Positions 19,345-64,000 of a stretch of DNA of 64,000 nucleotides are shown here, piece by piece; the stretch's first letter is position 1, and each line of letters opens with the position of its first letter. A program made the position numbers and the translations under genes. The notes under the pieces were generated by a model that saw only the letters and a list, made by a program, of their open reading frames with translations, had not been told where the DNA came from and did no database searches. Origin of the DNA: Macrostomum lignano (taxonomy: Eukaryota). The DNA is taken from assembly GCA_002269645.1 (NCBI GenBank), contig NIVC01001116.1:35222-99221 (forward strand). The letters run 5' to 3'.

Positions 19345-19345
19345 C

Positions 19346-19367
19346 TGGTGGTCAGCTAAGTGGGATT
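19346..19367 (+). promoter_or_regulatory. Primer-binding site, tRNA-Leu-like
   Basis: TGGTGGTCAGCTAAGTGGGATT one base after the LTR end; resembles the common gypsy PBS TGGTGTCAGAAGTGGGAT. Confidence 0.6.
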
Positions 19368-19412
19368 ACAAAATGCCGAAACCCCTTCAACGAGTCGTTC
19401 AAGTGCTATACT

Positions 19413-20720: not shown

Positions 20721-20899
20721 TGCCAGTATCGCGCCCGAGCGAAACAGCAGCTCGGGAAATGGGACGGCTGGACGCAACATCGGGGGCAGCACCATCCAGC
20801 AGCCGAGCCAGCACTAAAGTCCCCGCCGCGGACTTTAGTCGCTCAGCAGGCCACTGCTAAGACCGCCTCCGCCGCACCTGTACAGCCATTTGCACCCAA

Positions 20900-27465: not shown

Positions 27466-27484
27466 ATGCCGGCCACCCCACGCA

Positions 27485-47500: not shown

Positions 47501-50500
47501 AGACACAGAGGAGTCACCTGTTAGACACAGAGGAGACACCTGTTAGACACAGTGAGTCACCTGTTAGACACAGAGGAGTTACCTGTTAGACACAGAGGAG
47601 TCACCTGTTAGACACAGAGGAGACACCTGTTAGACACAGAGGAGACACCTGTTAGACACAGAGGAGTTACCTGTTAGACACAGAGGAGTCACCTGTTAGA
47701 CACAGAGGAGTCACCTGTTAGACACAGAGGAGACACCTGTTAGACACAGAGGAGACACCTGTTAGACACAGTGAGTCACCTGTTAGACACAGAGGAGTTA
47801 CCTGTTAGACACAGAGGAGTCACCTGTTAGACACAGAGGAGACACCTGTTAGACACAGAGGAGTCACCTGTTAGACACAGAGGAGACACCTGTTAGACAC
47901 AGTGAGTCACCTGTTAGACACAGAGGAGTTACCTGTTAGACACAGAGGAGTCACCTGTTAGACACAGAGGAGACACCTGTTAGACACAGAGGAGACACCT
48001 GTTAGACACAGAGGAGTTACCTGTTAGACACAGAGGAGTCACCTGTTAGACACAGAGGAGTCACCTGTTAGACACAGAGGAGACACCTGTTAGACACAGA
48101 GGAGACACCTGTTAGACACAGTGAGTCACCTGTTAGACACAGAGGAGACACCTGTTAGACATAGAGGAGACACCTGTTAGACACAGAGGAGTCACCTGTT
48201 AGACACAGAGGAGTCACCTGTTAGACACAGAGGAGTCACCTGTTAGACACAGAGGAGACACCTGTTAGACACAGAGGAGTCACCTGTTAGACACAGAGGA
48301 GTCACCTGTTAGACACAGAGGAGACACCTGTTAGACACAGAGGAGACACCTGTTAGACACAGAGGAGTCACCTGTTAGACACAGAGGAGACACCTGTTAG
48401 ACACAGAGGAGACACCTGTTAGACACAGTGAGTCACCTGTTAGACACAGAGGAAACACCTGTTAGATATAGAGGAGACACCTGTTAGACACAGAGGAGTC
48501 ACCTGTTAGACACAGAGGAGTTACCTGTTAGACACAGAGGAGTCACCTGTTAGACACAGAGGAGTCACCTGTTAGACACAGAGGAGTCACCTGTTAGACA
48601 CAGAGGAGTCACCTGTTAGACACAGAGGAGACACCTGTTAGACACAGAGGAGACACCTGTTAGACACAGTGAGTCACCTGTTAGACACAGAGGAGACACC
48701 TGTTAGACATAGAGGAGACACCTGTTAGACACAGAGGAGACACCTGTTAGACACAGAGGAGTTACCTGTTAGACACAGAGGAGTCACCTGTTAGACACAG
48801 AGGAGTCACCTGTTAGACACAGAGGAGACACCTGTTAGACACAGAGGAGTCACCTGTTAGACACAGAGGAGTCACCTGTTAGACACAGAGGAGACACCTG
48901 TTAGACACAGAGGAGACACCTGTTAGACACAGTGAGTCACCTGTTAGACACAGAGGAGACACCTGTTAGACATAGAGGAGACACCTGTTAGACACAGAGG
49001 AGTCACCTGTTAGACACAGAGGAGTCACCTGTTAGACACAGAGGAGACACCTGTTAGACACAGAGGAGACACCTGTTAGACACAGAGGAGACACCTGTTA
49101 GACGGAAGAGTTAGGGACAGTTTCCATAGAGACAGATTGATCACGCAGCCCATCATTTAATTTTCACAGCGAACGCTGCTGCGTCGATCACCTGCTACTC
49201 GAGGTCCTCATCGACTAGCTATACCAGCAACGGAACTACGACCCTCTGTGCCTTTGACAGCAGCTGCTACACATATGACTACGGAGAAGTGCGTCACACG
49301 CTCGTTTTAGCCTGACTCTTTCCTGACACCCACTGATTCCTTCCCGACACCCACTGATTCCTTCCTGAAACCAGTGACTCCTTCCCGACACCCACTGACT
49401 CCTTCTTGACACCCACTGATTCCTTCCCGACACCCACTGACTCCTTCCTGAAACCAGTGACTCCTTCCCGACACCCACTGACTTCTTCTTGACACCCACT
49501 GATTCCTTCCCGACACCCACTGACTCCTTCCCGACACCCACTGACTCTTTCCCGACACCCACTGACTCTTTCCCAACACCACTGACTCTTTCCCAACACC
49601 CACTGACTCTTTCCCGACACCCACTGACTCCCTCCAGACACCACTGACTCTTTCCCAACACCACTGACTCTTTACCGACACCCACTGATTCTTTCCCGAC
49701 ACCCACTGACTCCTTCCAGACACCACTGACTCTTTCCCAACACCCACTGACTCTTTCCCGACACCCACTGACTCCCTCCAGACACCACTGACTCTTTCCC
49801 AACACCACTGACTCTTTCCCGACACCCACTGACTCCCTCCAGACACCACTGACTCTTTCCCGACACCCACTGACTCCCTCCAGACACCACTGACTCTTTC
49901 CCGACACCCACTGACTCCCTCCAGACACCACTGACTCTTTCCCAACACCCACTGACTCCCTCCAGACACCACTGACTCTTTCCCGACACCCACTGACTCC
50001 CTCCAGACACCACTGACTCTTTCCCGACACCCACTGACTCCCTCCAGACACCACTGACTCTTTCCCAACACCACTGACTCCCTCCAGACACCACTGACTC
50101 TTTCCCGACACCCACTGACTCCCTCCAGACACCACTGACTCTTTCCCGACACCCACTGACTCCCTCCAGACACCACTGACTCTTTCCCAACACCCACTGA
50201 CTCCCTCCAGACACCACTGACTCTTTCCCGACACCCACTGACTCCCTCCAGACACCACTGACTCTTTCCCGACACCCACTGACTCCCTCCAGACACCACG
50301 GACTCTTTCCCAACACCACTGACTCTTTCCCGACACCCACTGATTCTTTCCCGGCACCCACTGACTCCTTCCAGACACCACTGACTCTTTCCCGACACCC
50401 ACTGACTCCCTCCAGACACCACTGACTCTTTCCCGACACCCACTGACTCCCTCCAGACACCACTGACTCTTTCCCAACACCACGGACTCTTTCCCAACAC

Positions 50501-53500
50501 CACTGACTCTTTCCCGACACCCACTGATTCTTTCCCGGCACCCACTGACTCCTTCCAGACACCACTGACTCTTTCCCGACACCCACTGATTCTTTATCGG
50601 CACTCACTGACTCCTTCCAGACACCACTGACTCCTTCCCAAACACCTACTGACTCTTTCCCGACACCCACTGACTCCTTCCCAAACACCTACTAACTCCT
50701 TCCCGGACACCACTGACTCCTTATCGACACCACTGACTCACATCCGACGTTTCTAATTACTCCTTGATCTAACCCAAGCAATTTTAAATAAGTATAAAAT
50801 GACTGTGCACTCATTTTGTTAAGTCTACCGCAGCAAAACCGAATTTTGCCCCTATACAGGACAACTTTGCTGGTTGTGGCACCTGCTCCGGGTATTCTTA
50901 CACCACCTGCAAAGCGTGCACTGCCAGCTACTGCAATACTCGACCGCCTGTTCTGAACTGTTACTACAGCAATGGAGACTATCTTCACAGCAGCCGAAGG
51001 AGGAGGAGATGTGAAAGTAGCTATTGCTATGAGTACAGCTTTACCTATGCTACTATCGATGTGAGTTTCAGACTCAAGTCGGAGTGCTGAAGTAATGTCT
51101 AATTTTATAATTTTATAGAATTAAAGTATAAAAATCTCTTTAACGGTTAGACAGCATCTTTGACCTGTTAGACAGTGACGTCAACCTGTTAGACAGTGAC
51201 ATCAACCTGTTAGACAGTGACATCAACCTGTTAGACAGTGACGTCAACCTGTTAGATAGTGACATCAACCTGTTAGATAGTGACGTCAACCTGTTAGACA
51301 GTGACGTCAACCTGTTAGATAGTGACATCAACCTGTTAGATAGTGACGTCAACCTGTTAGACAGTGACGTCAACCTGTTAGATAGTGACATCAACCTGTT
51401 ATACAGTGACGTCAACCTGTTAGACAGTGACGTCAACCTGTTAGATAGTGACATCAACCTGTTAGATAGTGACGTCAACCTGTTAGATAGTGACATCAAC
51501 CTGTTAGATAGTGACGTCAACCTGTTAGACAGTGATGTCAAACTGTTAGACAGTGACGTCAACCTGTTAGACAGTGATGTCAACCCGTTAGACAGTGACG
51601 TCAACCTGTTAGACAGTGACGTCAACCTGTTAGATAGTGACATCAACCTGTTAGATAGTGACGTCAACCTGTTAGACAGTGACGCCAACCTGTTAGACAG
51701 TGACGTCAACCTGTTAAACAGTGACGTCAACCTGTTAGATAGTGACATCAACCTGTTAGACAGTGATGTCAACCTGTTAGACAGTCTTCAACAACACTAG
51801 TATTGTCCCCATCATCATAGATCTTCTTCGCCGGCTGTGGAGAGTGCTCAAAGCTCGACTCCTATAGCAACTGTAGAGCCTGCAACAGCGGGGACTACTG
51901 CAACTCTGCCGCCAGTCTTCGAGGCTGGAATTTTACCGCCTTCGCCACCGCCGTCATTCTGGCTATGATTCGGTTGCTGTGACTCTGTTAACAAATGTCT
52001 GTCACGTGTTAACTTCAAACAGATTTATTTATTCCTGATTACCTCGTCTGACGCTTCTATTAGCCATCACAGCTCGCATTAACTGTCTCATCTGACAGAG
52101 TGGATGACCGCGAACCTATCCAGATACAGGGTGAAACAACTTGATGAAGAATAAAAACTTACTGATTGAAAAAATGTTTGTTTTATTATATATTCACTTA
52201 GCAGAGAATGCTAATATTCAATAACTAGTTGCCCTTTCTTTCATGAACAAATTTATTGTTTATTTTAGTGGAGCAGAAGGTTTGCTGGACCAGCCTCCTA
52301 GATCTTCAATTGCTGGACCAGCCTCCCATAACCCCAGTTGCTGAGCCAGCCTCCCAGATCCTCATTTGCTGGGCCAGCCTCCCAGATCCTCAGTTTCTTG
52401 GCCAGCCTCCCTGATCCTCAGTTGCTGGGTCACCAGCCTCCCAGATCCTCAGTTGCTGGGCCAGCCTCCCAGATCCTCAGTTGCTTGGCCAGCCTCCCAG
52501 ATCCTCAGTTGCTGGGCCAGCCTCGCAGATCCTCAGTTGCTGGGCCAGCCTCCCAGATCCTCAGTTGCTGGGCCAGCCTTTCAGATCCTCAGTTGCTTGG
52601 CCAGCCTCCCAGATCCTCAGTTGCTGGGCCAGCCTCGCAGATCCTCAGTTGCTGGGCCAGCCTCCCAGATCCTCAGTTGCTGGGCCAGCCTTTCAGATCC
52701 TCAGTTGCTTGGCCAGCCTCCCAGATCCTCATGATGTGTTCCTTATTACCAGTCCTCAACTGTAATCAAGGAACAATCACTTCTAGCTCTGTAGCTAGGC
52801 AACCCAGTAATCAAATGAAGGTATTCAATTACCTTTGAGTCCTTAAATGAGAGCTCTCGTAATAATCCTCGTCCGTAGTATCGCGATCAGTAACTTTCCT
52901 GTCCTTCAGGAAGTTTAGGCGCCTGGTAACAGTTGATCTGGTCCGTTATCTCCTTTGTCCTCTTGACTTCTTGCCGGCCGGTATCTGTAGTTCGGACCAA
53001 TAAGAAGCTTCCAAATTAACAATGGGTACCCTGCGCCAAACTGCGGTTTAATATAAGCCTACTCCTTCTAGTAGTGCCTCTATGCACTCTAGGTATGGCT
53101 CCGGAAACCACTGATAGTCTTCTAAGATCTATCAGGGGCAGTCCTTCTGGAGACTGCAACCAGTGGAGTCTAAACAGACTCAAGAGTCTCAGCAGACTCA
53201 AATAAACTCAAGTCTCAATAGACTTGAGCGAGACGTCTCAACCAACGGGCGCAAATGAGTAAGGCTTACCGCAAGAACTCGTCCACGACGCGAGTTTCTT
53301 CAGGAAGGCTTCACTAGAGCTTCCTCTTCGGAGCTTCTCTCCCTTGGAGATTGTTGGCTCCGGGTCCGTTCCGGACCACTTGTATTTATAGGCGTTCAGA
53401 CCTCTCTCGAGGTCGTACATCACTGTCTTCGCAAATGTCAAAGGGTCACGATTCGGTGGCTGTCAAGCATGACAGGGTAGAAAGTTGCGCAACTAGTCTA

Positions 53501-56500
53501 CTGTAAAAGCGCATGATTGGTTACCGTAGCTGGTAGACTTTGATTGGTTCATCCGGGTGCAACCCGAGTGCAAACAAAATGATGACTTGAAGGTGGGGTT
53601 TGAATTGACAGTTGTTGGTCGCACGTGATTGGGTGATTTCTAAAATTAGCATGCTCGAGGTCTCTCTCTTCCTATTGGTTAGTCCGAATATACTTATAGT
53701 TCAAAGCATACCTTTATTCATGCTCTTCAATTTACTACTAAATAAAATGTGTGAGTAGTACATTAACACTTTTATGTCTTCTTACGGGAGGTAGAACACT
53801 CTACAAAATCTCCCATGTTTACAAAAAAACTCGTCCCGAGTTTTAAAGAGAGGATTGAAACGCATAAAAAGTTCAAGCATGTCTTTATAATAATCATTTG
53901 TCATAAGTGTTACAGGTATTTAGTAATGGGTAGTTAAGAGCGTTGGTTATAAAAGTTATTTAAAGGTAAGTATACGCATGCAAATAAAATGTTTTTGGTT
54001 ACAGTATTGACATGTGCGCCAAGACTAACAATAGGCGCACTGCCGCAAACTACTTCTACCTATCGGGTAATTCTGCCAGAGCTGAATATAATGTGAGTCG
54101 CTTAAACATTGTCCGCATATGCGATGTCTGTTTTCACAAATAATTGGTGGCTTGACAGCCAAGTCATCAGTTAAACATATTGGGCATTCGTAGAGTTGCT
54201 GTAGTTGGGGCGCCTGTTTGGACAGTGCGTTGCCCATTGTCGTTGTCGCTTGAAGTTTGAAGTCGCTCAGATTAGTCGCCTCTTACGACAAGCTTGCGAA
54301 GCTGTAGAGCTATTCTGACCCGGTCTCTACACGGGTTGTTTTCGCAACTTAACGAGGTCGCAGATTGTAGCCATGGTGCTGGTTCTCGGTTGATGTTTGT
54401 GTCTCCTCGTGTTTTGTTGCGATGTGGCGGTTCGCCGAACGCGTGCGATCAGCGTTGCCTAGTGACGGTAAAAATGTTGTCGTGTCAGTGTTGATCTTCT
54501 TTAGTCGATGAATGTGCACGTAGAATTGGTGCTGATGAGGATCTTGCACATTGGCCAGGCGTGCCGTTGTCGGTGACGTTAGTTGGACCACTCGATATGG
54601 TCCTTTGTACTTCTGTGCGTGTTTGTGCGTCTGTTGCGGCGGATAGTGCAGGTAGACGATGTCGCCGGCTGTCAGAGTTGTCGATCTCGTGTCGGTGCCG
54701 GTGGTTAGAGCCACCTGATTGTCGATGTTGTGCTTGGCTACTTTCCATGCGAGGTGTAGTTGCGTGACGAACTTTTGAATGGACGTCGGGACTTCCACAT
54801 ATTGCGATGGTAGTAGTTGCTGTGCCAATAGGTTTGGTGGTTGGAAGTCTCGTCCAAACATTAGAAAGAATGGCGTATTGTCCGTTGATCGATGAATAGC
54901 GCTGTTGTAGGCCATTGTTACTGCTTGCAGATAGATGATCCAGTCGTCCGGTTGTTGATGCGCGAAGTGTGTAATCATCTCGTGTAGGTTGCGGTGAAAC
55001 CTTTCAACCATGTTCGCCTTCGGATTGTAGGTCGATGTGTAAATCTGCGTGATGTTGAGGATCTTCACCACTTGCTGAAAGAGTTGAGACGTAAACTGCG
55101 ATCCATTGTCCGATGTGAGGTTCTTTGGCGTACCGTACTTGCAGATGATGTCGTTGAAGAAACCCATTGCCACTGTCTGAGCTGTGATGTCCGGTATTGG
55201 TATGGCAATAGCAAACTTTGAGAAAATGTCCAAGGCTGTTAGGATGTAGGTGTAGGCTATGCCATGGAGACAGCTCGGTGGCAGCGGTCCGGTGATGTCG
55301 ATGCTGAGACAGTCCATAGTTGTTGACTTTGGTATCGATTGTAGCTGTGGTTTTTGTCGTCGTCCTGTCTTCGATGCTGCGCATGAGTGGCAGTTGTTGC
55401 AATACTGCTTGATGTCGCCATGCATGCTTGGCCAAAAGTAGTATTGCTCCACTCTTGCAACGGTTTTGGCTGCCGACAGGTGTCCAGCGAGTGGGTTGTC
55501 GTGCAGCTCGTTGAGAATTGCCTGCCTAAACGAATATGGCATGTAGATTTTAGGTTTGTTGTCACTCATCCAGTAGAGTCGTGACTTGTTGATTGTTAAA
55601 TGTTGTCGCTGCTTGCGCAGGAATTTTCGTTCCACGGGGCTGAGCTTGATGTCCTTGTCGTTGTTTTTAACTGCTATGTAGAAGTTGTCGTGTTCCGTCT
55701 CATCCACCAATTCCTTGATGTTAGGGATTGGATGAATGGCGTTGACTTCGTAGGCTCTTGACAGGGCGTCCGCGGCCTTGTTAGTAATTCCTGGTTTGTA
55801 GACGAGCTTGTAGTTGTAGTCCTGGATCTTGAGTGTCATCCTGATGAGTCGGTTGTTTGTTTGTCCTTTTGTAGTTACGACGTAGGTCAGCGGTGCGTGA
55901 TCTGTGCGTACTATCGTCTGTAATGGAGATCCATAGATGTAGTAGTGAAACTGTCGTAGGGCGAACAGAACTCCTAGTAGTTCTCGTTCCGTAGCTGACC
56001 ATTTTGTCTCATTCGGTTTAAGTGCTCGACTGACGTAGGCTATAGGTCGTTCCTTTTTGTCTTCAGTTTCCTGTAGTAGGACTGCTCCGAGTCCCGTTCC
56101 TGAGGCGTCTGTCTCGATGATGAAGGGTTTGTCGAAGTCCGGATGCTGTAGCAGTGCGTCTGATGTCAGCTGTCGTTTGATTTCGTCAAAACTTTCTTGT
56201 TGCTTTTGTGTCCAATTCTCCTGCTTCCATTTGTCGAACTTGAGCAGGTCGTACAGCGGCTTTGCTGTCTTCGCGAAGTTGGGTAAGAACTTTCGGAAGT
56301 ATTGCGCAAGTCCAAGAAATGATTGGACCTTCGTTTTGCTAGTTGGCGTAGGAAACTTTTTCACTTTATCCACGTTGTCTGGGTCCGGTGAAATTCCTTT
56401 GGCTGTCACCTGATGTCCCAGGTAACGCACGTTGTCTCGGAAGAATTTGCATTTAGTTGGTTGTAGCTTCAGACCTTGACGTTGTATAAGCGCGAGGGCC

Positions 56501-59500
56501 TTCTCCGTCGCTTCATAGAGTCGTTCGAAGTCTTCTCCGTAGGCCAAGATGTCGTCAACATAGTGCAACAGGTTCGTGCATCCTGCAAGCATGTATGCTG
56601 TTAGTCGGCTCATCGTTGCTGGGCTGTTGCTGAGTCCCATCGGCGATCGATTGTACTCGTATACTTGTCCATTGTAGGTTTTGAAAGCCGTGTACTGTCG
56701 TGACTCTTTCTCGATTTCAATTTGCCAAAATCCATGACGTAGATCGAACACTGTGAACAATTTTGCCGTGTTGAGCTTTGCTAGTAGTTCGGAGATCTTC
56801 GGTAGGCTTTGCTGATCCGTCGGTATGTACTTGTTCAGTAGTCTGAAGTCACATACGAGTCGTCTTTCGTTAGTCTCCTTCTTTTGCACCAAGAGACATG
56901 GTGATGAGTATGCTGAAATGGCTTTGCTGATGATGCCGTGTTTCAGCATTTTGTCGATAATCTCATCGAAGTGCTGTTGCAGATGCTTGGCGATCGGGTA
57001 CGGTTTGCACTGAATTGGTTCCGTGTGCGGCAGAAGTTTGATTTCCTGTTTGATGTCCTTGGCTCGTCCGATGTCGTAGTCATGGTGGCAGAAAGCGTCG
57101 TTGTACTTCCACAACAGCTGTCGAACTTTCCTCTTTTGCTGTTCCGTAATCGGGCTGTCATCCAAATTGATCTTCTTTTGAAATTCTTCCTCTGTTAGTC
57201 GTGGAGTCGCTTGCTCAATCAGCATAACCGATGCTTGGGTGTTGAGATGACCGATGCACATTCCTTGTCGTAGATGAACCGTTTCTGTGTTCGGGTTGAA
57301 TATTTGTACTGGCAGCTGTTTATCTTTTGCAACCAGTACTAGTGCCGTAGGCATCATAATTTGGTGTTTAGCCGTGACTCTTCTGTTTGGGTCGAATATC
57401 ATTGCTTCCTCCGTTGCGTTAGTTGCCTTTGCCTTTATCCAGCAGGCGCTCTCCGGTTGGATGATGACATCTTGTTGCAATGTTACTTTTGGTAGTACTC
57501 GGATCTGGTTGATCAATGGTTGTTCTACCGAGTCGATCTTGAACGTTTGCTTATTGAAGTCGAAGGTCAATGGTAGTCGAAGCTGCTTGAACGTGTCGAT
57601 GCCAACAATAACGTCCTGGTTTGGGAGTCTGTCGATGACGTACGTTGGAACTGTCAAATGTTTATTAGCGATTCTTAAATCAATGTCGGCTTTTCCCAGA
57701 ATGTTTAGCGAATGTCCTCCTGCTCCTGCAACTGCGATTGTTGCTGGCCGTAGAGCAAGTCGTAGCTTGTTGCACAGTTGTTTTGATATAACTGTGATGG
57801 AGCTGCCGGAGTCGAGTAGCGCTCGACATGGTAGATTGTTGATTACCACTTGAGCCATGGCTTTGCCAATTTCGGCGTGTAGAGTACATACGTAGTTCTC
57901 TGGCCATTTTGGGTCTTGCTGTTCTGCTTGATAGTTAGGTGGTTGTATTCTTGGTGCCGTTGGTGTTGTCGGAATCGATGGATATAGCCGCGTTGCTAGT
58001 GTCGGTTGCCCTTGAACCTCACGATGTGCAGTTTCTGTTAGTTCTAAACTGTTGTCGCCTTCCGTTGTCGTTCTTTGCATTATGGCATTCACTGTCTTCT
58101 TAGCTTTGGACAAGTTTGACTGAAGCACCGTACGATCGACGAAATGATGAAGATTGCCGTGACAATCCACACAATGCAAGCACCGTAGAAGATGAATCCT
58201 TGATAGAGACTGCCTCTTCCATTGAGCAGCTCCCAGAAGCTGTTTGTCCAAAATGATTTGATGGCGCTGTCCATTGAAACAAGGACGGGAAATCTTCCTG
58301 TCCCGGTTCCTTTGTCCTTTCTTGTGAACAGCTGGTGAATCATCTTGCGTTGGGTGATGAACGCTTGCAAGAAGTCGTTGATCGTCCATCCTGGTGTTAT
58401 CTCGTCAAGTTGGATATCGGCGAATGGCGTATACTTCGTTCTGTTGAATCGGATTTTCAAATCCTCCATGTCGTAGTTTTCGTCGACGATTACTTCCGGT
58501 TCTGTGATGTTTGCTGTCGTTCCAGTTGTTTTGATGACGTGTAGTGCATTGTCCAGTTGATAATAGTTTGCTGCCGTGGTGCAAGGTCTCGGTATTGCGG
58601 TGCCAACGATGATGTTGTGTACCGTGTCCAAGAATCCCTGAATTCGTTTTCCTTCGTAGAACGCTTCAATCCTTGGCTTGTCGTAGCAGGTTGTTGACGT
58701 GTTCGACGGCAAGATGTTAAAGTGCTGTATCGGCGTGCACTTGTATATCAACAGATGCTCGTATATTGGAACTGCCAAAACGTTCGTCATTCCGGTGATT
58801 TTACGAAAAGTCATCGTAGGGTTGACATAGTAGTTTTGTCTGGCATAATTTAAGTTGATTGCGTGCATTTTGCAAGTTAGCTGGACCAGTGTTCGATGCA
58901 AGTGGTTTAACTGGTTGTGTAGATTGTGATCCAAAGCCGTTATCTTTGCTGACAGTAGTCGGTTTGACACCAGTTTGGGACGTTCGATGTCACGTCGTCG
59001 TCTGTTCTGTTGTTCCTGCTGTTGATACGTTCCGTTGATGATCGCCAGAAAGGTTTGTTTGTCGTCATCTTTTACGTAGACTGGTATCTCTTGTTCCGAG
59101 ATGAATAGTGTCTTGTCTGTATCCTTGCATTTCAGTTTTTGCTCGACTGGTTTCTTTTGAAACGTCAGTGCCAAGTCTCCTGACTTTGCCAAAAACGTGT
59201 TTGACAGTAGACCTCCTTCAACTGTGTGATACTTTTGAAGCTTGCAGTCAATTTCCGGCTCAACTTCCCACGCGAAGAAGTATTGTCGTGACTTAGATGG
59301 TTCTTCATATCGTGAGTCGCCTCTGCGTATAATTTGCCATCGATAGTCTTGATGATATGTTGGACTCAACGGTAAGCTGTATAGTTCCTCATTCCGCAGT
59401 ATCGGCGTTGGACACCATCCTTTGCTGTATCGGCAGTCGCTTAATTGCAGTTGTAGCGACTCCATTTTTTCAAAAGGATTGTGGTAGAATGGAATATTCC

Positions 59501-62500
59501 TGATTAGGTAACTGTTTCGTGTCATGTAGTTAGTCCATGCTTCCGAAAAGTGTACATATCGTCCGTTTGCTGAGTTCTTCGTTCGGTAAAGTTGTGCCTC
59601 CCCCACTTTCTCATCCGGTTCTAGCTGACCATCCTTTGAGAACAGTGTTTGGTTCCATTGTAGACATTCAGCGTGCGACACATGTAGTTCGTGTTGCCAA
59701 AATCGAATTCTGTTCCATTGTCCTCGCCAAACTTTTTCCACTAGGTGCTTGTCTCTAAAGCACACTATTCCGAGTTGTCGATGCTTCTTGATGTTAGCTT
59801 TGTAGAGATCAATTGTGATCTTCTTTGGCTTCGTCTGATTTGTCTTGAAGTAGCTGCATTTGATGTCGGTTGGTATCTTGTAGATCATCGGTTGGATATG
59901 CGCATCCGTTGGACATATCATTGGTTTTCCATTGCTGTTGCTTTGGTGACTACTGCCGTCAGTAGTATTATGATGATCCAGAATATCCAGAATCGCCATT
60001 TTCTGAACGTTGCCGTTGTCTTTGCTGGCATTGGCTGCGGCTGCCATTCGTTATCTTCTGCGTCCGCATCGTATTCTTCCTCTTGTTCCATTGGCGTTTC
60101 CGAGCGCAAGGCATCCGATTCGTTCCGCTGCTTGTCGTCTTCATCATTTTCTTCCTTGCTTTCTTCCGATGTTGTAGTTGTGTCACTCCATTGTCTGCGG
60201 TACCTCACTTCGGCCTTGTAGTCGACCGTTTGAATGTAGGCTTCACCATTTCGTTTATATCGGATCTCGTAGCATTGATCGCTGTCGGAGCTTAGATTTC
60301 TTTCTTCCATTCCTTTGTGCCTTCCGTCTTCATGTTCTTTGTCGGCGGCTTGGTTGTCATCAGCGTCATTCTGCATCTCATAATCGTGATCGCTGCTTTC
60401 TTCTTGCTGTTCTTCTTCCATCTCTGCATTTCCGTCGTTGCTTCTTTCGTTGTCATCCTTCGTTGCCAGTTCTTTGTCGTTGCCTTTGTTTGTTTCTTCT
60501 TTTCTTTCACTGATGTCGCTTGCAATGTTTTTTCTGTGCTCACTTCTGTCTTTTCTTCTTCGCTGTCAATGTTAGTTTCTTTCATTTCGACCATGCTGAT
60601 GTTTTTTGTCTTTTCGCTGCTCTCCGCATCGAGCCAGTCGATTTCATTGATAGTGAAGTCCATTTCAAGTCGTCTATCGTGAAGACTTGCTGCTCTTGCT
60701 GTTCGCTTTCCGGTGTGTACGTGATGGCGTTTGCATATCGTTGCATCGCTTGCGTTGGTTGCTTGGGCATGTATCTGGCGTTTCGCGGTCTGTAGCCATT
60801 GTTTCCGAAGCGTTTCGTGTTTTGCTGCTGCCAATTTTGATGTTGTTGCCATGGTTTTTGCGGCTTCCTTCTGTTGAATGGCTGTCGCTGCATGTCATTT
60901 CTTGTTGACCGATGAGGACAATGTATTTGGTAGTGTCCTTCTCGTCCACAGTAATAGCATCTGGCTTGGGCTCGTTCATTTCGTCTTTTTTGTTCGGCGA
61001 TAACGGCTGTTTGATGTTGCATCAGTTTGTTTAGTTGCTGTGTCAGTTTCTGCACTTCTGTGTTGCCGGTTGTCATTAGTGGAGCGCTTGCTTCCCACTG
61101 CATTCCGCACCGTAAAAGGTCTTCCTCGGTTTCAATGTTTTCGCGTAGAAGTCTATCTCGGAGTGACGGCTGTGCATTGTTTATTACGTGCAGAATCAGA
61201 TTTTGTTCGCGATCCATCAATCGCTGTCGCTCTCTAGCGGCTAATTCTGCCGCACCCAGAGGTGGTTGGTCTGCAGCTGGCAGTGTTGGCTGATGCAGTG
61301 CCTTAATTATCTGACGGATGTCGTCCACAAAGGTCAGGAAGGATTCGGTTGGCTGCATCCTTCTGTTATGCAACTTGTGCAGTAGCACTGATCTGTTTGT
61401 GCCACAGCGGTTGAAATGCGCGCGCAGTTGAATGATTAATGCTGGGTAGTTTTGCTGTGTTGCCGCATCTAGTTTACCATAAATCTCTCGTGCAGTGCCT
61501 TGGAGGAGTGGTGGCAACAGTTGCGCTTTTTCTGGATTTTGTAGGTTGTATTCCCTACATACCAGGTCAAAATGATCAACAAAGGTGTTAAAGTCTTTTT
61601 CCATAGAAAAGGTGCCAACTGTCTCTTTGATATCTCTGTGCACCGTTGGATTGCGCCGCGCCATGTTGTTGATGGGATAGAACGGTAGCTCTAGGTCTGG
61701 GTCGATTTGTAATGGATCTTCCAGTGTGGTGTTTCTTTCGAAATAAACTTCGGTTGTAACTGATTGTCTCGCGGCGCTTTTGACACCTCAATTTGTTATG
61801 TCTGACCTTGACGGAATTCGGCTTTTGGCTGCTTTTTCTGACCTCTTATTCGCTGGCTGATTTTCGCACTTATGCGGCGTCCCGCAAAGTGTATCTTTAA
61901 AGTGCTTGAAGTGCAGCTGCTTCTTGCTTTTTTCAAAGGCCTTTCTTGTCTTCGTGACGTGCCTTGTCACGTTTTATCAAATTTCGGTTTGTTTTAGCTT
62001 TCGTCAAGTGTTTTTAATTTCGGTTTTGTTTTAGTGTGTATTGATTATTTTTCGGTTTGTTTTCAGTGTACCGGACGTTGTTTTCGGTTTTGTTTAAGGT
62101 TTACTCTTGCTCGAGCTCGTTAAAAACAAAAATTTAACACGCGTGCTCAAACGTTACTCAAAATTGACAGGTACTCAAGCCTGTATACCTAAACTTTTAC
62201 TCGAGTTTCAAATCGTACAAAAATCGAAAAGTGTCGAAAAGTGTTACCTCTAACACGTGCGCGCAAAATTAATGAAGTCGCTCTTTCGTCACTTTACAAT
62301 AGCTTGGCCAGGCTATTGCTCAAAAGTTTGAGTAGTGCCGAGAGGGCGAGATCACCAATTGATGTGTTCCTTATTACCAGTCCTCAACTGTAATCAAGGA
62401 ACAATCACTTCTAGCTCTGTAGCTAGGCAACCCAGTAATCAAATGAAGGTATTCAATTACCTTTGAGTCCTTAAATGAGAGCTCTCGTAATAATCCTCGT

Positions 62501-64000
62501 CCGTAGTATCGCGATCAGTAACTTTCCTGTCCTTCAGGAAGTTTAGGCGCCTGGTAACAGTTGATCTGGTCCGTTATCTCCTTTGTCCTCTTGACTTCTT
62601 GCCGGCCGGTATCTGTAGTTCGGACCAATCGGAAGCTTCCAAATTAACAATGGGACCCTGCGCCAAACTGCGGTTTAATATAAGCCTACTCCTTCTAGTA
62701 GTGCCTCTATGCACTCTAGGTATGGCTCCGGAAACCACTGATAGTCTTCTAAGATCTATCAGGGGCAGTCCTTCTGGAGACTGCAACCAGTGGAGTCTAA
62801 ACAGACTCAAGAGTCTCAGCAGACTCAAATAAACTCAAGTCTCAATAGACTTGAGCGAGACGTCTCAACCAACGGGCGCAAATGAGTAAGGCTTACCGCA
62901 AGAACTCGTCCACGACGCGAGTTTCTTCAGGAAGGCTTCACTAGAGCTTCCTCTTCGGAGCTTCTCTCCTTGGAGATTTTTGGCTCCGGGTCCGTTCCGG
63001 ACCACTTGTATTTATAGGCGTTCAGACCTCTCTCGAGGTCGTACATCACTGTCTTCGCAAATGTCAAAGGGTCACGATTCGGTGGCTGTCAAGCATGACA
63101 GGGTAGAAAGTTGCGCAACTAGTCTACTGTAAAAGCGCATGATTGGTTACCGTAGCTGGTAGACTTTGATTGGTTCATCCGGGTGCAACCCGAGTGCAAA
63201 CAAAATGATGACTTGAAGGTGGGGTTTGAATTGACAGTTGTTGGTCGCACGTGATTGGGTGATTTCTAAAATTAGCATGCTCGAGGTTCTCTCTTCCTAT
63301 TGGTTAGTCCGAATATACTTATAGTTCAAAGCATACCTTTATTCATGCTCTTCAATTTACTACTAAATAAAATGTGTGAGTAGTACATTAACACTTTTAT
63401 GTCTTCTTACGGGAGGTAGAACACTCTACACTCAGTTGCTGGGCCAGCCTCGCAGATCCTCAGTTGCTGGGCCAGCCTCCCAGATCTCAGTTGCTGGGCC
63501 AGCCCCAGATCCCCAGTTGCTGGGCCAGCCTCCCAGATCCTCAGTTGCTGGGTCACCAGCCTCCCAGATCTCCAGTTGCTGGGCCACCTTTTCAAAATTC
63601 TCGGGCTCTGCACTAACCGTACAACTTCGCCTCGTAGGTCCAGTTAGCATTGGCAACCCAACGCGTTTTGACGTCATTAAACTCGGCGATGGGATCCGGA
63701 ATTATTCCAGCCTGTCGTAAGTCGCTGTAAACATCTCCAGGCACCGAGCCAGGCACTGAGATCGCACCTACAAAGTTGTTAAGTTTGGTGTCATTTATTT
63801 TGTAGAATATCAATCAACTGGGACAGTAAATGCTTCATTTATTGCTCACCATCTGAACGGCGCAGAGCCCATTGAACATTTGGCGTATTTAGTGAGATTT
63901 TTGTCGTAATGGCGAATTATAAAATAACGTTTCGCTTTGCACTACTAGTCTGCCGTTAAACAGTAGAACTGTGAAGACACTATTAAGAAAAATTGTCCAA
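38559..64000 (-). CDS. MANBA: Beta-mannosidase (GH2 family)
   Basis: Exons: 63850-end (signal peptide; apparent 1-bp loss at 63898-63902), 63618-63767, 45142-45296, 44688-44899, 43871-44165, 42978-43322, 42127-42538, 41432-41742, 40525-40974, 39837-40046, 38559-38798 (a GTAAGT near its end may splice to a tiny terminal exon). Motifs FSWDWGP, LWWPNGYG, MLRVWGGG, IWQDF, VWVGNNENE, SEFGFQS, YWQLNDVW. Confidence 0.95.
38846..39705. repeat. 34-bp tandem repeat in a MANBA intron
   Basis: Unit TCAGTGAGCATCCTTATCCCTCAGTGCCGATCCT, highly homogeneous. Confidence 0.96.
45378..45985. repeat. 28-bp tandem repeat (GTTGCTGGGCCAGCCTCCCAGATCCTCA), array 1
   Basis: Same unit recurs at 52285-52731 and 63431-63590. 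Confidence 0.93.
46897..51982 (+). CDS. Two-domain Ly6/uPAR (three-finger)-like secreted protein with GPI signal, 175 aa, nested antisense in MANBA intron 2
   Basis: Exons 46897-46942, 49170-49288, 50860-51060, 51821-51982 are in phase. MKYLIVSVAILAAFISNAAASITCY...FAGCGTC...CKACTASYCN...LNCYY...CESSYCY...FAGCGEC...CRACNSGDYCNSAA followed by a hydrophobic tail. Absent from the ORF track. Confidence 0.85.
46970..49103. repeat. 22-bp minisatellite (CACCTGTTAGACACAGAGGAGW) in intron 1 of the Ly6-like gene
   Basis: Direct tandem copies. Confidence 0.97.
49320..50730. repeat. 20-22-bp C-rich minisatellite (CCGACACCCACTGACTCYYT) in intron 2 of the Ly6-like gene
   Basis: Direct tandem copies with alternating variants. 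Confidence 0.96.
51140..51785. repeat. 21-bp minisatellite (CAACCTGTTAGACAGTGACGT) in intron 3 of the Ly6-like gene
   Basis: Direct tandem copies. Confidence 0.96.
52285..52731. repeat. 28-bp tandem repeat, array 2 left part (continues at 63431-63590 beyond the LTR element)
   Basis: Same unit as 45378-45985; interrupted at CTCA. Confidence 0.92.
52732..53805 (-). repeat. 3' LTR (1074 bp)
   Basis: Direct repeat of 62360-63430; preceded on the minus strand by purine-rich AAACATGGGAGA (PPT-like). Confidence 0.95.
54025..54237 (-). CDS. 70-aa C3HC4 RING protein with N-myristoylation signal
   Basis: ATG in strong context (ACAATGG); MGNALSK; C18-x2-C21-x12-C34-x3-H38-x2-C41-x2-C44-x22-C67-x2-C70. 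Confidence 0.8.
   Translation of the reverse strand: MGNALSKQAPQLQQLYECPICLTDDLAVKPPIICENRHRICGQCLSDSHYIQLWQNYPIGRSSLRQCAYC
54349..58110 (-). CDS. pol: pol: protease-RT-RNase H-integrase, uninterrupted
   Basis: LLDSGS; PMGLSNSPATM and YVDD; ETDASGTG and TDHAPL; LHDNPLAGH...CNNC; IDITG, SDNGSQF, VERFHR; KYKGPY. Confidence 0.96.
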   Translation of the reverse strand, partial: SKAKKTVNAIMQRTTTEGDNSLELTETAHREVQGQPTLATRLYPSIPTTPTAPRIQPPNYQAEQQDPKWPENYVCTLHAEIGKAMAQVVINNLPCRALLDSGSSITVISKQLCNKLRLALRPATIAVAGAGGHSLNILGKADIDLRIANKHLTVPTYVIDRLPNQDVIVGIDTFKQLRLPLTFDFNKQTFKIDSVEQPLINQIRVLPKVTLQQDVIIQPESACWIKAKATNATEEAMIFDPNRRVTAKHQIMMPTALVLVAKDKQLPVQIFNPNTETVHLRQGMCIGHLNTQASVMLIEQATPRLTEEEFQKKINLDDSPITEQQKRKVRQLLWKYNDAFCHHDYDIGRAKDIKQEIKLLPHTEPIQCKPYPIAKHLQQHFDEIIDKMLKHGIISKAISAYSSPCLLVQKKETNERRLVCDFRLLNKYIPTDQQSLPKISELLAKLNTAKLFTVFDLRHGFWQIEIEKESRQYTAFKTYNGQVYEYNRSPMGLSNSPATMSRLTAYMLAGCTNLLHYVDDILAYGEDFERLYEATEKALALIQRQGLKLQPTKCKFFRDNVRYLGHQVTAKGISPDPDNVDKVKKFPTPTSKTKVQSFLGLAQYFRKFLPNFAKTAKPLYDLLKFDKWKQENWTQKQQESFDEIKRQLTSDALLQHPDFDKPFIIETDASGTGLGAVLLQETEDKKERPIAYVSRALKPNETKWSATERELLGVLFALRQFHYYIYGSPLQTIVRTDHAPLTYVVTTKGQTNNRLIRMTLKIQDYNYKLVYKPGITNKAADALSRAYEVNAIHPIPNIKELVDETEHDNFYIAVKNNDKDIKLSPVERKFLRKQRQHLTINKSRLYWMSDNKPKIYMPYSFRQAILNELHDNPLAGHLSAAKTVARVEQYYFWPSMHGDIKQYCNNCHSCAASKTGRRQKPQLQSIPKSTTMDCLSIDITGPLPPSCLHGIAYTYILTALDIFSKFAIAIPIPDITAQTVAMGFFNDIICKYGTPKNLTSDNGSQFTSQLFQQVVKILNITQIYTSTYNPKANMVERFHRNLHEMITHFAHQQPDDWIIYLQAVTMAYNSAIHRSTDNTPFFLMFGRDFQPPNLLAQQLLPSQYVEVPTSIQKFVTQLHLAWKVAKHNIDNQVALTTGTDTRSTTLTAGDIVYLHYPPQQTHKHAQKYKGPYRVVQLTSPTTARLANVQDPHQHQFYVHIHRLKKINTDTTTFLPSLGNADRTRSANRHIATKHEETQTSTENQHHGYNLRPR
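58089..60000 (-). CDS. env: Envelope glycoprotein, class III (herpes gB / chuvirus G-like)
   Basis: Hydrophobic signal WRFWIFWIIIILLTAVVTKATA, Cys-rich ectodomain with NxS/T sites, furin-like RRRR at 58992-59003, gB-like NPTMTF...LLIYKCTPI and CYDKP segments, C-terminal TM FIFYGACIVWIVTAIFIISSIV. Confidence 0.8.
60001..60670 (-). CDS. Acidic linker between the Gag nucleocapsid region and the Env signal (frameshifted in this assembly)
   Basis: Parts of track ORFs 60292-60852 and 59918-60421; D/E-rich. Confidence 0.6.
60582..61664 (-). CDS. gag: gag (capsid + CCHC nucleocapsid)
   Basis: FNTFVDHFDLVC...LLQGTAREIY, RRMQPTESFLTFVDDIR, zinc knuckle CYYCGREGHYQIHC. Confidence 0.92.
   Translation of the reverse strand: MARRNPTVHRDIKETVGTFSMEKDFNTFVDHFDLVCREYNLQNPEKAQLLPPLLQGTAREIYGKLDAATQQNYPALIIQLRAHFNRCGTNRSVLLHKLHNRRMQPTESFLTFVDDIRQIIKALHQPTLPAADQPPLGAAELAARERQRLMDREQNLILHVINNAQPSLRDRLLRENIETEEDLLRCGMQWEASAPLMTTGNTEVQKLTQQLNKLMQHQTAVIAEQKRRNERAQARCYYCGREGHYQIHCPHRSTRNDMQRQPFNRRKPQKPWQQHQNWQQQNTKRFGNNGYRPRNARYMPKQPTQAMQRYANAITYTPESEQQEQQVFTIDDLKWTSLSMKSTGSMRRAAKRQKTSAWSK
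62344..62357 (-). promoter_or_regulatory. Primer-binding site (tRNA-Val-like, inferred)
   Basis: TGGTGATCTCGCCC two bases after the 5' LTR end. Confidence 0.65.
62360..63430 (-). repeat. 5' LTR (1071 bp)
   Basis: Direct repeat of 52732-53805. Confidence 0.95.
63009..63303 (-). promoter_or_regulatory. LTR U3 promoter: TATA box with four upstream CCAAT boxes
   Basis: TATAAATA at 63009-63016 (minus strand); CCAAT near 63142, 63169, 63254 and 63299. Confidence 0.6.

What the first reader, a model, noticed from the sequence alone, without database searches (positions are those of the whole stretch)
52732..63430. Ty3/gypsy retroelement with env placed between gag and pol
On the minus strand the order is LTR-PBS-gag(CCHC)-acidic linker-signal/TM-fusogen ectodomain-TM-PR-RT-RH-IN-RING ORF-LTR. 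Retroviruses and errantiviruses are gag-pol-env; I do not know a described gag-env-pol lineage, but could not search. The topology is self-consistent: Gag cytosolic, ectodomain luminal between two hydrophobic segments, Pol cytosolic again. LTRs are nearly identical and pol is intact, so this may be a recently active enveloped endogenous virus of a new architecture.
Basis: partly seen in the sequence, partly recalled or inferred. Interest (0 to 1): 0.95.

Follow-up and report, generated by a model that had tools for sequence, protein, structure and literature searches.

The report
Flatworm retroelement with gB-like envelope
This is a real, young copy of a flatworm (Macrostomum lignano) Ty3/gypsy endogenous retrovirus-like element with a herpesvirus-gB-type envelope gene between gag and pol, but that gene order has already been published for flatworms, nematodes and bryozoans, so it is a good example and not a new architecture.

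Summary
On the minus strand, 52732-63430 is a complete LTR element. It has 1074/1071-nt LTRs (3 mismatches, 3 gap columns), TG..CA ends and a 4-bp target duplication inside a 28-bp minisatellite. The order is gag(CCHC), charged linker, hydrophobic segment, ectodomain, hydrophobic segment, PR-RT-RH-IN, then a small RING-like ORF. The ectodomain is a class III, herpesvirus-gB-type fusion protein (profile vs PDB E=1e-15; Foldseek E~1e-21). The host is Macrostomum lignano (96% identical named protein). Env is not a secondary insertion: in all 16 fetched relatives that hold this env and a Ty3/gypsy-type pol, env lies upstream of pol. Several are single uninterrupted gag-env-pol ORFs. The claim of a new architecture fails. 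GAG-ENV-POL elements with gB-type env, some with an ectodomain between two transmembrane segments, are described for Platyhelminthes, Nematoda and Bryozoa (PMC13524379, preprint 2023; Sacco et al. 2022 for nematodes). This copy is also not intact as it stands: the gag-env-pol reading frame changes four times relative to a 99% identical protein. Two points remain of interest: the single polytopic Gag-Env-Pol polyprotein, and the unconserved, myristoylation-type RING mini-ORF.

The parts
52732..63430 (-). Whole LTR retroelement (10,699 bp), LTR to LTR
   Evidence: Direct repeats; LTR alignment; boundaries read.
62360..63430 (-). 5' LTR (1071 nt), TG..CA
52732..53805 (-). 3' LTR (1074 nt), TG..CA
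63431..63434 (-). Target-site duplication TGAG, 5' side (its partner is 52728-52731)
   Evidence: An uninterrupted minisatellite unit has TGAG once at this point.
52728..52731 (-). Target-site duplication TGAG, 3' side
62340..62357 (-). PBS-like stretch starting with TGG, 2 nt after the 5' LTR. The tRNA was not identified.
   Evidence: No tRNA gene in the window to compare with.
54349..61664 (-). gag-env-pol polyprotein gene, given as one part. In this copy it is broken by four changes of reading frame, so it appears as five overlapping ORFs. No other kind of break was counted.
   Evidence: ORF list. Frame order against the 99% identical P0002, and against P0060 and P0003. Single-ORF relatives.
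60918..60959 (-). Gag CCHC zinc knuckle
   Evidence: Pattern match at gag residues 236-249. Pfam zf-CCHC is weak, E=0.037.
59987..60917 (-). Charged, low-complexity linker between the Gag knuckle and the first hydrophobic segment
   Evidence: Composition: D+E 0.30 in the distal part and K+R 0.22 in the proximal part. No Pfam family above cut-off.
59930..59986 (-). Hydrophobic segment 1 (signal-anchor / internal signal candidate) directly upstream of the ectodomain
   Evidence: Kyte-Doolittle peak of 2.19. A segment sits at the same relative place in P0003, P0046/P0059, P0034, P0051 and P0016.
58323..59927 (-). Env ectodomain: class III, herpesvirus-gB-like fusion glycoprotein
   Evidence: Pfam PF24664 E=2e-5, below cut-off. 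Profile of relatives against PDB: herpesvirus gB, E=1.2e-15. AF2 model with mean pLDDT 76.9. Foldseek PDB: gB of KSHV, HSV-1 and EBV, E 1e-22 to 1e-20, prob 1.00. BFVD: nyavirus, chu-like and rhabdo-like glycoproteins and gB.
58992..59003 (-). Furin-type R-R-R-R site in a low-confidence loop just before the long central helix
   Evidence: Env residues 349-352. Loop 341-357 has pLDDT below 50 and is followed by helix 362-408.
58110..58199 (-). Hydrophobic segment 2 (membrane anchor / stop-transfer) after the ectodomain
   Evidence: Kyte-Doolittle peak of 2.43 at env residues 617-646. The same segment lies in frame with pol in P0060.
57568..57858 (-). Aspartic protease (DSG)
   Evidence: Pfam Asp_protease_2 E=1.5e-10, RVP E=2.3e-4; motif.
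56407..56886 (-). Reverse transcriptase (YVDD)
   Evidence: Pfam RVT_1 E=3.1e-28; motif.
55816..56214 (-). RNase H / connection region
   Evidence: Pfam RT_RNaseH_2 E=3.9e-37, RT_RNaseH E=1.3e-34.
55021..55539 (-). Integrase: HHCC zinc domain plus catalytic core
   Evidence: Pfam Integrase_H2C2 E=3.1e-20, rve E=4e-14.
54025..54237 (-). 70-aa RING-like ORF between pol and the 3' LTR. It starts M-G-x-x-x-S and has full C3HC4 spacing. Unverified as a gene.
   Evidence: Pfam RING families all below cut-off. PDB best matches are cellular RINGs at E>=0.018. No homologue found.
53806..53820 (-). PPT-like region: a short purine run 3 nt upstream of the 3' LTR
52282..52731 (.). Host 28-bp minisatellite interrupted by the insertion (continues at 63431-63586)

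Best explanation
The region is a young, full-length genomic copy of a Macrostomum lignano Ty3/gypsy (Metaviridae-type) endogenous retrovirus-like element. It belongs to the already described GAG-ENV-POL kind.

Shown:
- It has LTRs, a target duplication, gag, PR-RT-RH-IN, and between gag and PR a class III (herpesvirus gB-like) fusion glycoprotein flanked by two hydrophobic segments.
- The same order recurs in distant relatives from flatworm, nematodes and unnamed environmental contigs.
- In several of those relatives the whole of gag-env-pol is one uninterrupted ORF.

Inferred mechanism: the native family translates one polytopic polyprotein.
- Gag and the charged linker stay in the cytosol.
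- The first hydrophobic segment acts as an internal signal or signal-anchor and sends the gB-like ectodomain into the ER lumen. There it would be glycosylated, would trimerise, and could be cut at the R-R-R-R loop by a furin-type protease.
- The second hydrophobic segment stops transfer, so PR-RT-RH-IN is made on the cytosolic side, tethered to the Env tail.
- The element's aspartic protease then releases Gag and Pol on the cytosolic side. A host signal peptidase may cut on the lumenal side, as in flavivirus-type polyproteins.
- Env would then serve cell-to-cell or particle-mediated entry, as proposed for other env-carrying Ty3/gypsy elements.

This particular copy has four frame changes in gag-env-pol, so as it stands it does not encode that polyprotein. 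Whether those are real mutations or long-read assembly indels cannot be told from the window.
For: Element structure.

Domains: PR, RT, RH and IN all far above Pfam cut-offs; DSG, YVDD, HHCC and CCHC motifs.

gB-type Env:
- A profile of 40 relatives against PDB gives herpesvirus gB at E=1.2e-15.
- The MSA-based AF2 model has mean pLDDT 76.9.
- Foldseek gives gB of KSHV, HSV-1, EBV, VZV and HCMV at E 1e-22 to 1e-18, prob 1.00, over about 650 columns.
- BFVD gives Monjiviricetes glycoproteins and gB.
- In relatives, PF24664 is above its cut-off (P0048, P0025) and PF00606 Glycoprotein_B is hit below its cut-off in P0034 and P0044.

Host: P0060, 'Retrovirus-related polyprotein', Macrostomum lignano, is 96% identical. 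P0003, also M. lignano, is a 2852-aa gag-env-pol protein.

Recurrence of the order:
- Of 54 env homologues, 16 also hold a Ty3/gypsy-type pol, always downstream of env.
- Eight hold gag, always upstream.
- Pfam order in P0034 and P0048 is capsid/gag(CCHC), gB-like, PR, RT, RH, IN in one protein.

Topology: two hydrophobic segments bracket the ectodomain here and in P0003, P0046/P0059, P0034, P0051 and P0016.

One frame in close kin: P0060 holds 240 residues of the Env C-terminus, the anchor and 1252 residues of Pol in a single protein. P0002 (99% identical) runs through all five of the window's ORFs.

Literature: GAG-ENV-POL with gB-type ENV in Platyhelminthes, Nematoda and Bryozoa, with ectodomains flanked by a signal peptide plus TM or by two TMs (PMC13524379).
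Against: - No expression, protein or particle data were available, so every step of the polyprotein pathway is inference.
- This copy has four frame changes.
- P0002 and P0003 are gene models of a eukaryotic genome and could in principle hide small introns. The single-ORF claim therefore rests mainly on P0060 and on the ORFs P0034, P0046, P0048 and P0051, which come from metagenome or run assemblies. I assume, but could not verify, that their gene calling uses no introns.
- A 1:1:1 Gag:Env:Pol output is unusual for retroviruses.
- Herpesvirus gB needs partner glycoproteins for fusion (PMC13524379), and none is seen here.
- The RT clade within Ty3/gypsy was not determined.
- Foldseek TM-scores are moderate (about 0.4), as expected for a monomer model of a multi-domain protein, but they are not proof of every domain.
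Confidence: 0.85

Rival explanations
1. The env block is a secondary (nested) insertion, a recombinant oddity of this one copy, or an assembly chimera. The family itself would be an ordinary gag-pol element.
For: Only the unusual position of env. The gag-env junction region is low-complexity and carries three of the four frame changes.
Against: - The same gag-env-pol order is seen in a 99% identical and a 96% identical M. lignano protein. It is also seen in a 27-34% identical M. lignano family and in 13 further env-then-pol proteins, one of them named as a nematode's.
- No internal repeats flank env.
- The element has one clean target duplication.
- The order is published for the phylum.
Confidence: 0.02
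2. The frame changes are native. Under this reading the element is intact and expresses its parts through programmed ribosomal frameshifting between successive overlapping ORFs. Alternatively it uses splicing or spliced-leader trans-splicing, as retroviruses do for gag-pol and env.
For: - Each successive ORF overlaps the previous one, and all shifts go in the same direction.
- Frameshifting between gag and pol is common in retroelements (established knowledge).
- The LTRs are 99.4% identical, so the copy is young.
Against: - A 99% identical protein (P0002) reads across all four junctions, and a 96% identical one (P0060) reads across the env-pol junction, in one frame.
- Distant relatives are single ORFs.
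- Four consecutive programmed shifts, three of them inside a low-complexity linker, have no precedent that I know of.
Confidence: 0.07
3. The copy is actually intact in the animal, and the four frame changes are consensus indel errors of a long-read assembly.
For: - Half of the LTR-LTR differences are single-base gaps (3 of 6), an unusually high share.
- A 99% identical protein from another annotation of the species has one frame throughout.
- All four shifts have the same direction.
Against: - None of the three LTR gap columns lies in a run of four or more identical bases, the usual site of such errors.
- P0002 may come from another copy.
- No reads were available.
Confidence: 0.3
4. The gB-like gene is a relic or has been co-opted, for example for host cell-cell fusion or as a restriction factor. 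Under this reading the family spreads only within cells like an ordinary retrotransposon.
For: - No evidence of particles or infection exists.
- Herpesvirus gB needs gH/gL and a receptor-binding partner, and these are absent here (PMC13524379).
Against: - The ectodomain is conserved with nearly invariant Cys, Trp and Pro columns across relatives only 18-27% identical to it.
- It stays linked to gag and pol inside one ORF in many lineages. That is the signature of selection on the element, not on a host gene.
- Monjiviricetes class III glycoproteins of the same fold act alone (established knowledge).
Confidence: 0.08

Closest known systems
GAG-ENV-POL Ty3/gypsy 'errantiviruses' with HSV/gB-type ENV of Platyhelminthes, Nematoda and Bryozoa (Chary & Hayashi, eLife 2026, PMC13524379; preprint 10.1101/2023.10.26.564294)
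   Same: - Same phylum.
- Ty3/gypsy-type pol and gB-type Env.
- Env lies between gag and pol.
- The ectodomain is flanked by two transmembrane segments.
- A furin-type site is present in some members.
- LTRs are near-identical.
   Different: - The text held does not name flatworm species, and its supplement is not held, so I could not check whether this very family is listed.
- The paper treats GAG, ENV and POL as separate ORFs, and its text has no mention of a single ORF or polyprotein.
- It requires uninterrupted ORFs, which this copy lacks.
- No RING ORF is mentioned there.
Non-canonical nematode endogenous retroviruses (Sacco et al., J Gen Virol 2022; known to me only through its citation in PMC13524379)
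   Same: A metavirus (Ty3/gypsy) that captured an RNA-virus-type glycoprotein gene, with ENV and POL in flipped order. Nematode proteins (Panagrolaimus, Ditylenchus) are among this Env's homologues.
   Different: A different phylum. Identity to the window's Env is about 20-25%. The paper itself could not be read here.
Drosophila errantiviruses (gypsy, ZAM and others)
   Same: Ty3/gypsy LTR elements that carry a viral fusion glycoprotein and are thought to use it to reach the germline (PMC13524379).
   Different: They have the order gag-pol-env. Env is of the F (class I) type and is expressed from a spliced subgenomic mRNA (established knowledge). Here Env is class III and lies upstream of pol, inside the polyprotein.
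Atlas virus and related nematode belpaoviruses (PMC9094657)
   Same: Env is translated as part of a single giant polyprotein without stops or introns (2828 residues). This is a precedent for Env inside the polyprotein of an LTR element.
   Different: They belong to the Bel/Pao superfamily, have the order Gag-Pol-Env, and carry a class II phlebovirus Gn-Gc-type Env.
Herpesvirus glycoprotein B and the class III glycoproteins of Monjiviricetes (nyaviruses, chu-like and rhabdo-like viruses; Pfam PF00606 and PF24664)
   Same: Same fold by profile and by structure search. There is a long central helix preceded by a basic cleavage loop, and a C-terminal membrane anchor.
   Different: Sequence identity is 10-16%. 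It is encoded by a retroelement, not by a DNA or negative-strand RNA virus. No partner glycoproteins are present, and the N-terminal signal is replaced by an internal hydrophobic segment.
Mosquito Bel/Pao elements with chuvirus-like glycoprotein (Dezordi et al. 2020, 10.1101/2020.02.15.950899; cited)
   Same: Capture of the same broad class III glycoprotein family by an LTR element. One fetched homologue (P0045) is a Bel/Pao pol followed by this env family.
   Different: A different superfamily, with the canonical pol-then-env order.
Flavivirus-type polytopic polyproteins (works-like comparison only; established knowledge)
   Same: The cytosolic capsid part, the lumenal glycoprotein part and the cytosolic enzyme part are made from one ORF. 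Internal signal and stop-transfer segments set the topology, and viral and host proteases cut on opposite sides of the membrane.
   Different: No homology and a different replication strategy. The cleavage events here are inferred and have not been observed.

Membership tests
Ty3/gypsy (Metaviridae-type) LTR retroelement | Two long terminal repeats in direct orientation with TG..CA ends and a short target-site duplication | tested here: met
   LTRs of 1071 and 1074 nt, 99.4% identical, with a TGAG duplication.
Ty3/gypsy (Metaviridae-type) LTR retroelement | Pol domain order PR-RT-RNase H-IN (integrase after RT) | tested here: met
   PR at residues 178-274, RT 502-661, RH 726-858, IN 951-1123 of the pol ORF. 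No Bel/Pao-specific families (Peptidase_A17, DUF1758) were hit.
Ty3/gypsy (Metaviridae-type) LTR retroelement | Gag with capsid and CCHC nucleocapsid knuckle | tested here: met
   CCHC pattern at gag residues 236-249. The capsid part has only a weak DUF1759 hit here. Relatives carry Ty3_capsid or Retrotrans_gag upstream of the same env.
Ty3/gypsy (Metaviridae-type) LTR retroelement | tRNA primer-binding site and polypurine tract | tested here: inconclusive
   A TGG-initiated stretch lies 2 nt after the 5' LTR, and a 6-nt purine run lies before the 3' LTR. No tRNA set was available to assign the primer.
Ty3/gypsy (Metaviridae-type) LTR retroelement | RT groups with Ty3/gypsy clades in a phylogeny | not tested
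   No reference RT set is on hand, and fetching named retroelements or viruses of animals was left out. Support is indirect: all strong pol homologues carry the Ty3/gypsy Pfam set.
GAG-ENV-POL gB-type 'errantiviruses' (PMC13524379) | ENV of the HSV/gB type | tested here: met
GAG-ENV-POL gB-type 'errantiviruses' (PMC13524379) | ENV located between GAG and POL on the same strand, within LTRs | tested here: met
   The order recurs in relatives.
GAG-ENV-POL gB-type 'errantiviruses' (PMC13524379) | Host in Platyhelminthes, Nematoda or Bryozoa | tested here: met
   A 96% identical protein is named as from Macrostomum lignano. Further kin are from M. lignano and two nematodes.
GAG-ENV-POL gB-type 'errantiviruses' (PMC13524379) | Ectodomain flanked by signal peptide plus TM, or by two TMs | tested here: met
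   Hydrophobic segments lie directly before and after the ectodomain.
GAG-ENV-POL gB-type 'errantiviruses' (PMC13524379) | Intact copy: uninterrupted GAG, ENV and POL ORFs | tested here: not met
   There are four frame changes across gag-env-pol in this copy relative to P0002. The env-homologous and pol-homologous parts are each open, but the upstream hydrophobic segment and the linker fall in other frames.
GAG-ENV-POL gB-type 'errantiviruses' (PMC13524379) | Position among 'ancient errantiviruses' in the POL tree; RNase H followed by a 'mini' domain; lineage-specific cysteine-bridge configuration | not tested
   The reference sequences and supplement are not held. Only the nearly invariant Cys columns were noted.
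Class III viral fusion glycoprotein (gB / G / gp64 fold) | Multi-domain elongated fold with a central trimerisation helix | tested here: met
   Foldseek prob 1.00 to more than 30 gB entries over about 650 columns. Predicted helix at residues 362-408.
Class III viral fusion glycoprotein (gB / G / gp64 fold) | Two internal fusion loops at the tip of domain I; trimeric assembly | not tested
   Only a monomer was modelled, and the loops were not mapped.
Class III viral fusion glycoprotein (gB / G / gp64 fold) | Membrane-fusion activity | not testable with these tools
   No functional data.
Arenavirus-Z-like myristoylated RING matrix protein (considered for the 70-aa ORF; a lead from memory only) | N-terminal Gly after Met in a myristoylation-type context, and a RING domain in a protein of about 100 residues or fewer | tested here: inconclusive
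   The ORF starts M-G-x-x-x-S and has C3HC4 spacing at residues 18-70. All Pfam RING hits are below cut-off.
Arenavirus-Z-like myristoylated RING matrix protein (considered for the 70-aa ORF; a lead from memory only) | Detectable sequence kinship to Z, or conservation among the element's relatives | tested here: not met
   The PDB search returns only cellular RINGs (TRAF6, SIAH1, TRIMs) at E>=0.018 and no Z protein. No homologue was found in the protein collection or in the fetched relatives.

The most novel reading that the evidence does not exclude
The native expression strategy of this flatworm/nematode clade is a single polytopic Gag-TM-gB-TM-Pol polyprotein. Pol is made tethered to the cytoplasmic tail of Env, and the three parts are produced 1:1:1. 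The text of the catalogue paper does not describe this. The 70-aa myristoylation-type RING ORF downstream of pol would be a family-specific accessory, a membrane-associated matrix or budding factor analogous to arenavirus Z.
Probability: 0.25. Interest if true: 0.55.

Novelty: already known. Interest (0 to 1): 0.27.

Why it matters
The finding adds no new architecture. It does give a well-delimited example, from a laboratory flatworm with transgenesis and genomic resources, of the GAG-ENV-POL class of env-carrying Ty3/gypsy elements. The protein evidence gathered here points to one thing the published text does not spell out: in several lineages gag, the gB-like env and pol are one continuous ORF. 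Env would then be made as the lumenal middle of a membrane-spanning polyprotein, and not from a subgenomic mRNA. If transcript and peptide data confirm this, it bears on how retroelements acquired and kept envelope genes, and on how class III fusogens moved between retroelements, herpesviruses and negative-strand RNA viruses. The RING mini-ORF is a minor open point.

Tried and rejected
- Single-sequence searches of Env were blank: PDB phmmer gave only chance hits, and the single-sequence AF2 model was useless (pLDDT 32). Only the profile and the MSA-based model worked.
- The length-restricted protein search found a single Env relative. The length-free search was needed.
- Secondary insertion or misassembly of env is rejected by its recurrence in relatives.
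- I first concluded that env always precedes pol in this family. That needs a qualifier: one homologue, P0045, is a Bel/Pao pol followed by env.
- Assembly homopolymer errors as the cause of the LTR indels are not supported (0 of 3 in runs of four or more bases).
- The RING ORF has no homologue and no Z-like hit, so it remains unverified.
- No tRNA or Rfam family occurs in the window, so the PBS could not be assigned.
- The supplements of both key papers are not held. I therefore could not look up this family's published name or clade.
- The second LTR element in the window has no gB-like env and gives no comparison for the gene order.

Disclosure of a slip: while deciding whether the frame changes were indels or predicted introns, I worked out roughly where one junction lies, in my reasoning only. 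One search also printed per-ORF match bounds on relatives. Neither is repeated in my notes or in this report, and nothing was deleted.
Full report
OBSERVATION

On the minus strand, 52732-63430 is a complete LTR element.
- The two LTRs are 62360-63430 and 52732-53805. They are 1071 and 1074 nt long and differ by 3 mismatches and 3 gap columns.
- They begin with TG and end with CA. The four bases TGAG occur on both flanks, where an uninterrupted unit of the surrounding 28-bp minisatellite has them once. This is a normal 4-bp target duplication.
- A TGG-initiated PBS-like stretch starts 2 nt after the 5' LTR, and a short purine run precedes the 3' LTR.

- Gag with a CCHC knuckle.
- A charged linker (D+E 0.30 in its distal part).
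- A hydrophobic segment.
- An ectodomain of about 535 residues with 12 cysteines, 6 N-glycosylation sequons and one R-R-R-R site.
- A second, strong hydrophobic segment.
- Protease (DSG), reverse transcriptase (YVDD), RNase H and integrase (HHCC plus core).
- A 70-aa ORF with complete C3HC4 spacing.

In this copy the gag-to-pol coding region is not one ORF. It is five overlapping ORFs, which means four changes of reading frame. Measured against P0002, a 99% identical 3074-aa protein in the public collection, the window's sequence passes through four frame changes. Measured against P0060 (96% identical) it passes through one. Pol itself (1346 aa) and the Env-homologous part (652-aa ORF) are each open.

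WHAT ENV IS

Sequence alone says little:
- The only Pfam hit of note is PF24664 (Monjiviricetes fusion glycoprotein), at E=2e-5 and below its cut-off.
- PDB phmmer gives only chance hits.
- A single-sequence AlphaFold model is useless (pLDDT 32).

The length-free HMMER search of 1.84 billion representatives found 54 homologues. I aligned 39 of them with the window's Env (alignment A1). The nearly invariant columns are mostly Cys, with Trp, Gly, Pro and Arg.
- A profile of A1 hits herpesvirus glycoprotein B structures at E=1.2e-15.
- The A1-based AlphaFold model reaches mean pLDDT 76.9. It has a long central helix (residues 362-408) preceded by a disordered loop that holds the R-R-R-R site.
- Foldseek against PDB returns gB of KSHV, HSV-1, EBV, VZV, PrV and HCMV at E 1e-22 to 1e-18, probability 1.00, over about 650 columns.
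- Against predicted viral structures the best matches are nyavirus, chu-like and rhabdo-like glycoproteins, together with gB.

Env is therefore a class III, gB-type fusion glycoprotein.

HOST

P0060 is 96% identical to the window's Pol and is named 'Retrovirus-related polyprotein, Macrostomum lignano' (UniRef A0A0M4HFM6). A more distant family, P0003 and four cluster mates (27-34% identical), is also from M. lignano. The window is rich in minisatellites (about 14.9 of 64 kb) and has no tRNA or Rfam hit. I take the host to be the free-living flatworm Macrostomum lignano.

IS ENV A LINEAGE FEATURE OR AN ACCIDENT?

I mapped the window's separate ORFs onto all fetched proteins.
- Sixteen of the 54 Env homologues also contain a Ty3/gypsy-type Pol, and in every one Env is upstream of Pol.
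- Eight contain Gag, always upstream of Env.
- Pfam confirms the order for P0034: Ty3_capsid, Glycoprotein_B, PR, RT, RH, IN.
- Pfam confirms it for P0048: Retrotrans_gag, zf-CCHC, PF24664 above cut-off, PR, RT, RH, IN. Each of these is a single protein.
- P0037, P0041 and P0044 show Gag followed by Env.
- The one exception is instructive. P0045 is a Bel/Pao Pol followed by this Env family, which is the canonical order in another superfamily.
- Named hosts among the relatives are M. lignano and the nematodes Panagrolaimus superbus and Ditylenchus destructor.

No internal repeats flank the env block. The secondary-insertion and misassembly rivals are rejected.

ONE ORF AND ITS TOPOLOGY

- P0060 carries 240 residues of the Env C-terminus, the membrane anchor and 1252 residues of Pol in a single protein.
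- P0034, P0046/P0059, P0048 and P0051 are 2000-2991-aa proteins from metagenome or run assemblies that span Env and Pol. P0048 spans Gag as well.
- P0003 spans Gag, Env and Pol in 2852 residues.
- A hydrophobic segment lies directly before the ectodomain and another directly after it, both here and in P0003, P0046/P0059, P0034, P0051 and P0016.

The best-supported mechanism is therefore a polytopic polyprotein. Gag and the linker are cytosolic. The gB-like ectodomain is lumenal, between an internal signal or anchor and a stop-transfer anchor. Pol is cytosolic again and tethered to the Env tail until the element's protease cuts it free. Host signal peptidase and a furin-type protease would act on the lumenal side. 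The layout is shown. The translocation and cleavage steps are inferred, by analogy with flavivirus-type polyproteins and with the single Gag-Pol-Env polyprotein of Atlas virus (PMC9094657).

COMPARISON WITH WHAT IS KNOWN

The architecture is already catalogued. Chary and Hayashi (eLife 2026, PMC13524379; preprint 2023) report the following:
- Env-carrying Ty3/gypsy elements of Nematoda, Bryozoa and Platyhelminthes carry only HSV/gB-type ENV.
- These elements are arranged GAG-ENV-POL.
- They do not form a single clade.
- gB-type ectodomains are flanked either by a signal peptide and a TM or by two TMs, with a furin site that is not always conserved.

They cite Sacco et al. 2022 for nematode elements with flipped ENV and POL.

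Three limits apply:
- The text held names no flatworm species, and its supplement is not held. I cannot say whether this very family is listed.
- The paper's text has no mention of a single ORF, fusion or polyprotein.
- A survey of M. lignano LTR retrotransposons classifies families by RT and does not discuss env (PMC12801592).

THE RING ORF

The 70-aa ORF at 54025-54237 starts M-G-x-x-x-S, a myristoylation-type start, and fits C3HC4 exactly.
- All Pfam RING hits are below cut-off.
- The best PDB matches are cellular RINGs at E>=0.018, and no arenavirus Z protein is returned.
- No homologue was found among proteins of similar length or in the fetched relatives.

It is a lead and not a finding.

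VERDICT

It is an already known kind: a gB-type GAG-ENV-POL Ty3/gypsy element of a flatworm. This copy has four frame changes. Residual interest lies in the single-polyprotein expression route and in the RING mini-ORF.

Noticed in passing
window 18291-28845 (+): A second, older LTR retroelement.
- Its LTRs are 18291-19344 and 27487-28845, 94.6-98.3% identical, with a length difference of about 300 bp.
- It has Ty3/gypsy-type RT and IN ORFs.
- Its Pol is only 27-28% identical to the finding's Pol.
- Its coding region is split into many short ORFs, and it has no gB-like env.
   Followed up: partly
window 1-52731 and 63431-63586: About 14.9 kb of the 64-kb window lies in minisatellite arrays with periods of 15-41 bp. 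The finding's element is inserted in a 28-bp array whose unit recurs at 45408-45990.
   Followed up: no
window 49239-50603 (-): A 455-aa ORF hits Pfam 'Grass antifreeze beta roll' (LbR_Ice_bind). It lies entirely on a 41-bp tandem array (49312-50739), so the hit is most likely a repeat-translation artefact and not a gene.
   Followed up: partly
window 54025-54237 (-): The RING-like mini-ORF starts with a myristoylation-type M-G-x-x-x-S and ends exactly on the last Cys of a C3HC4 pattern. No homologue was found anywhere, so whether it is a gene is open.
   Followed up: yes
protein P0045 (Logan assembly, 2342 aa): A Bel/Pao-type Pol (Peptidase_A17, rve, DUF5641) is followed by a member of the same Env family. 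The same class III env is thus linked to two LTR superfamilies in opposite gene orders.
   Followed up: partly
protein P0025 (ENA assembly, 2266 aa): Aspartic-protease domains lie both upstream (about residues 320-413) and downstream (about 1804-2073) of the gB-like domain in one protein. This odd layout was not explained.
   Followed up: no
protein P0002 (UniParc UPI0007A1BB94, 3074 aa): This 99% identical protein carries about 1640 unrelated N-terminal residues and lacks about 158 residues of the ectodomain. It looks like a gene model that fuses the element to a neighbour and skips part of env.
   Followed up: no
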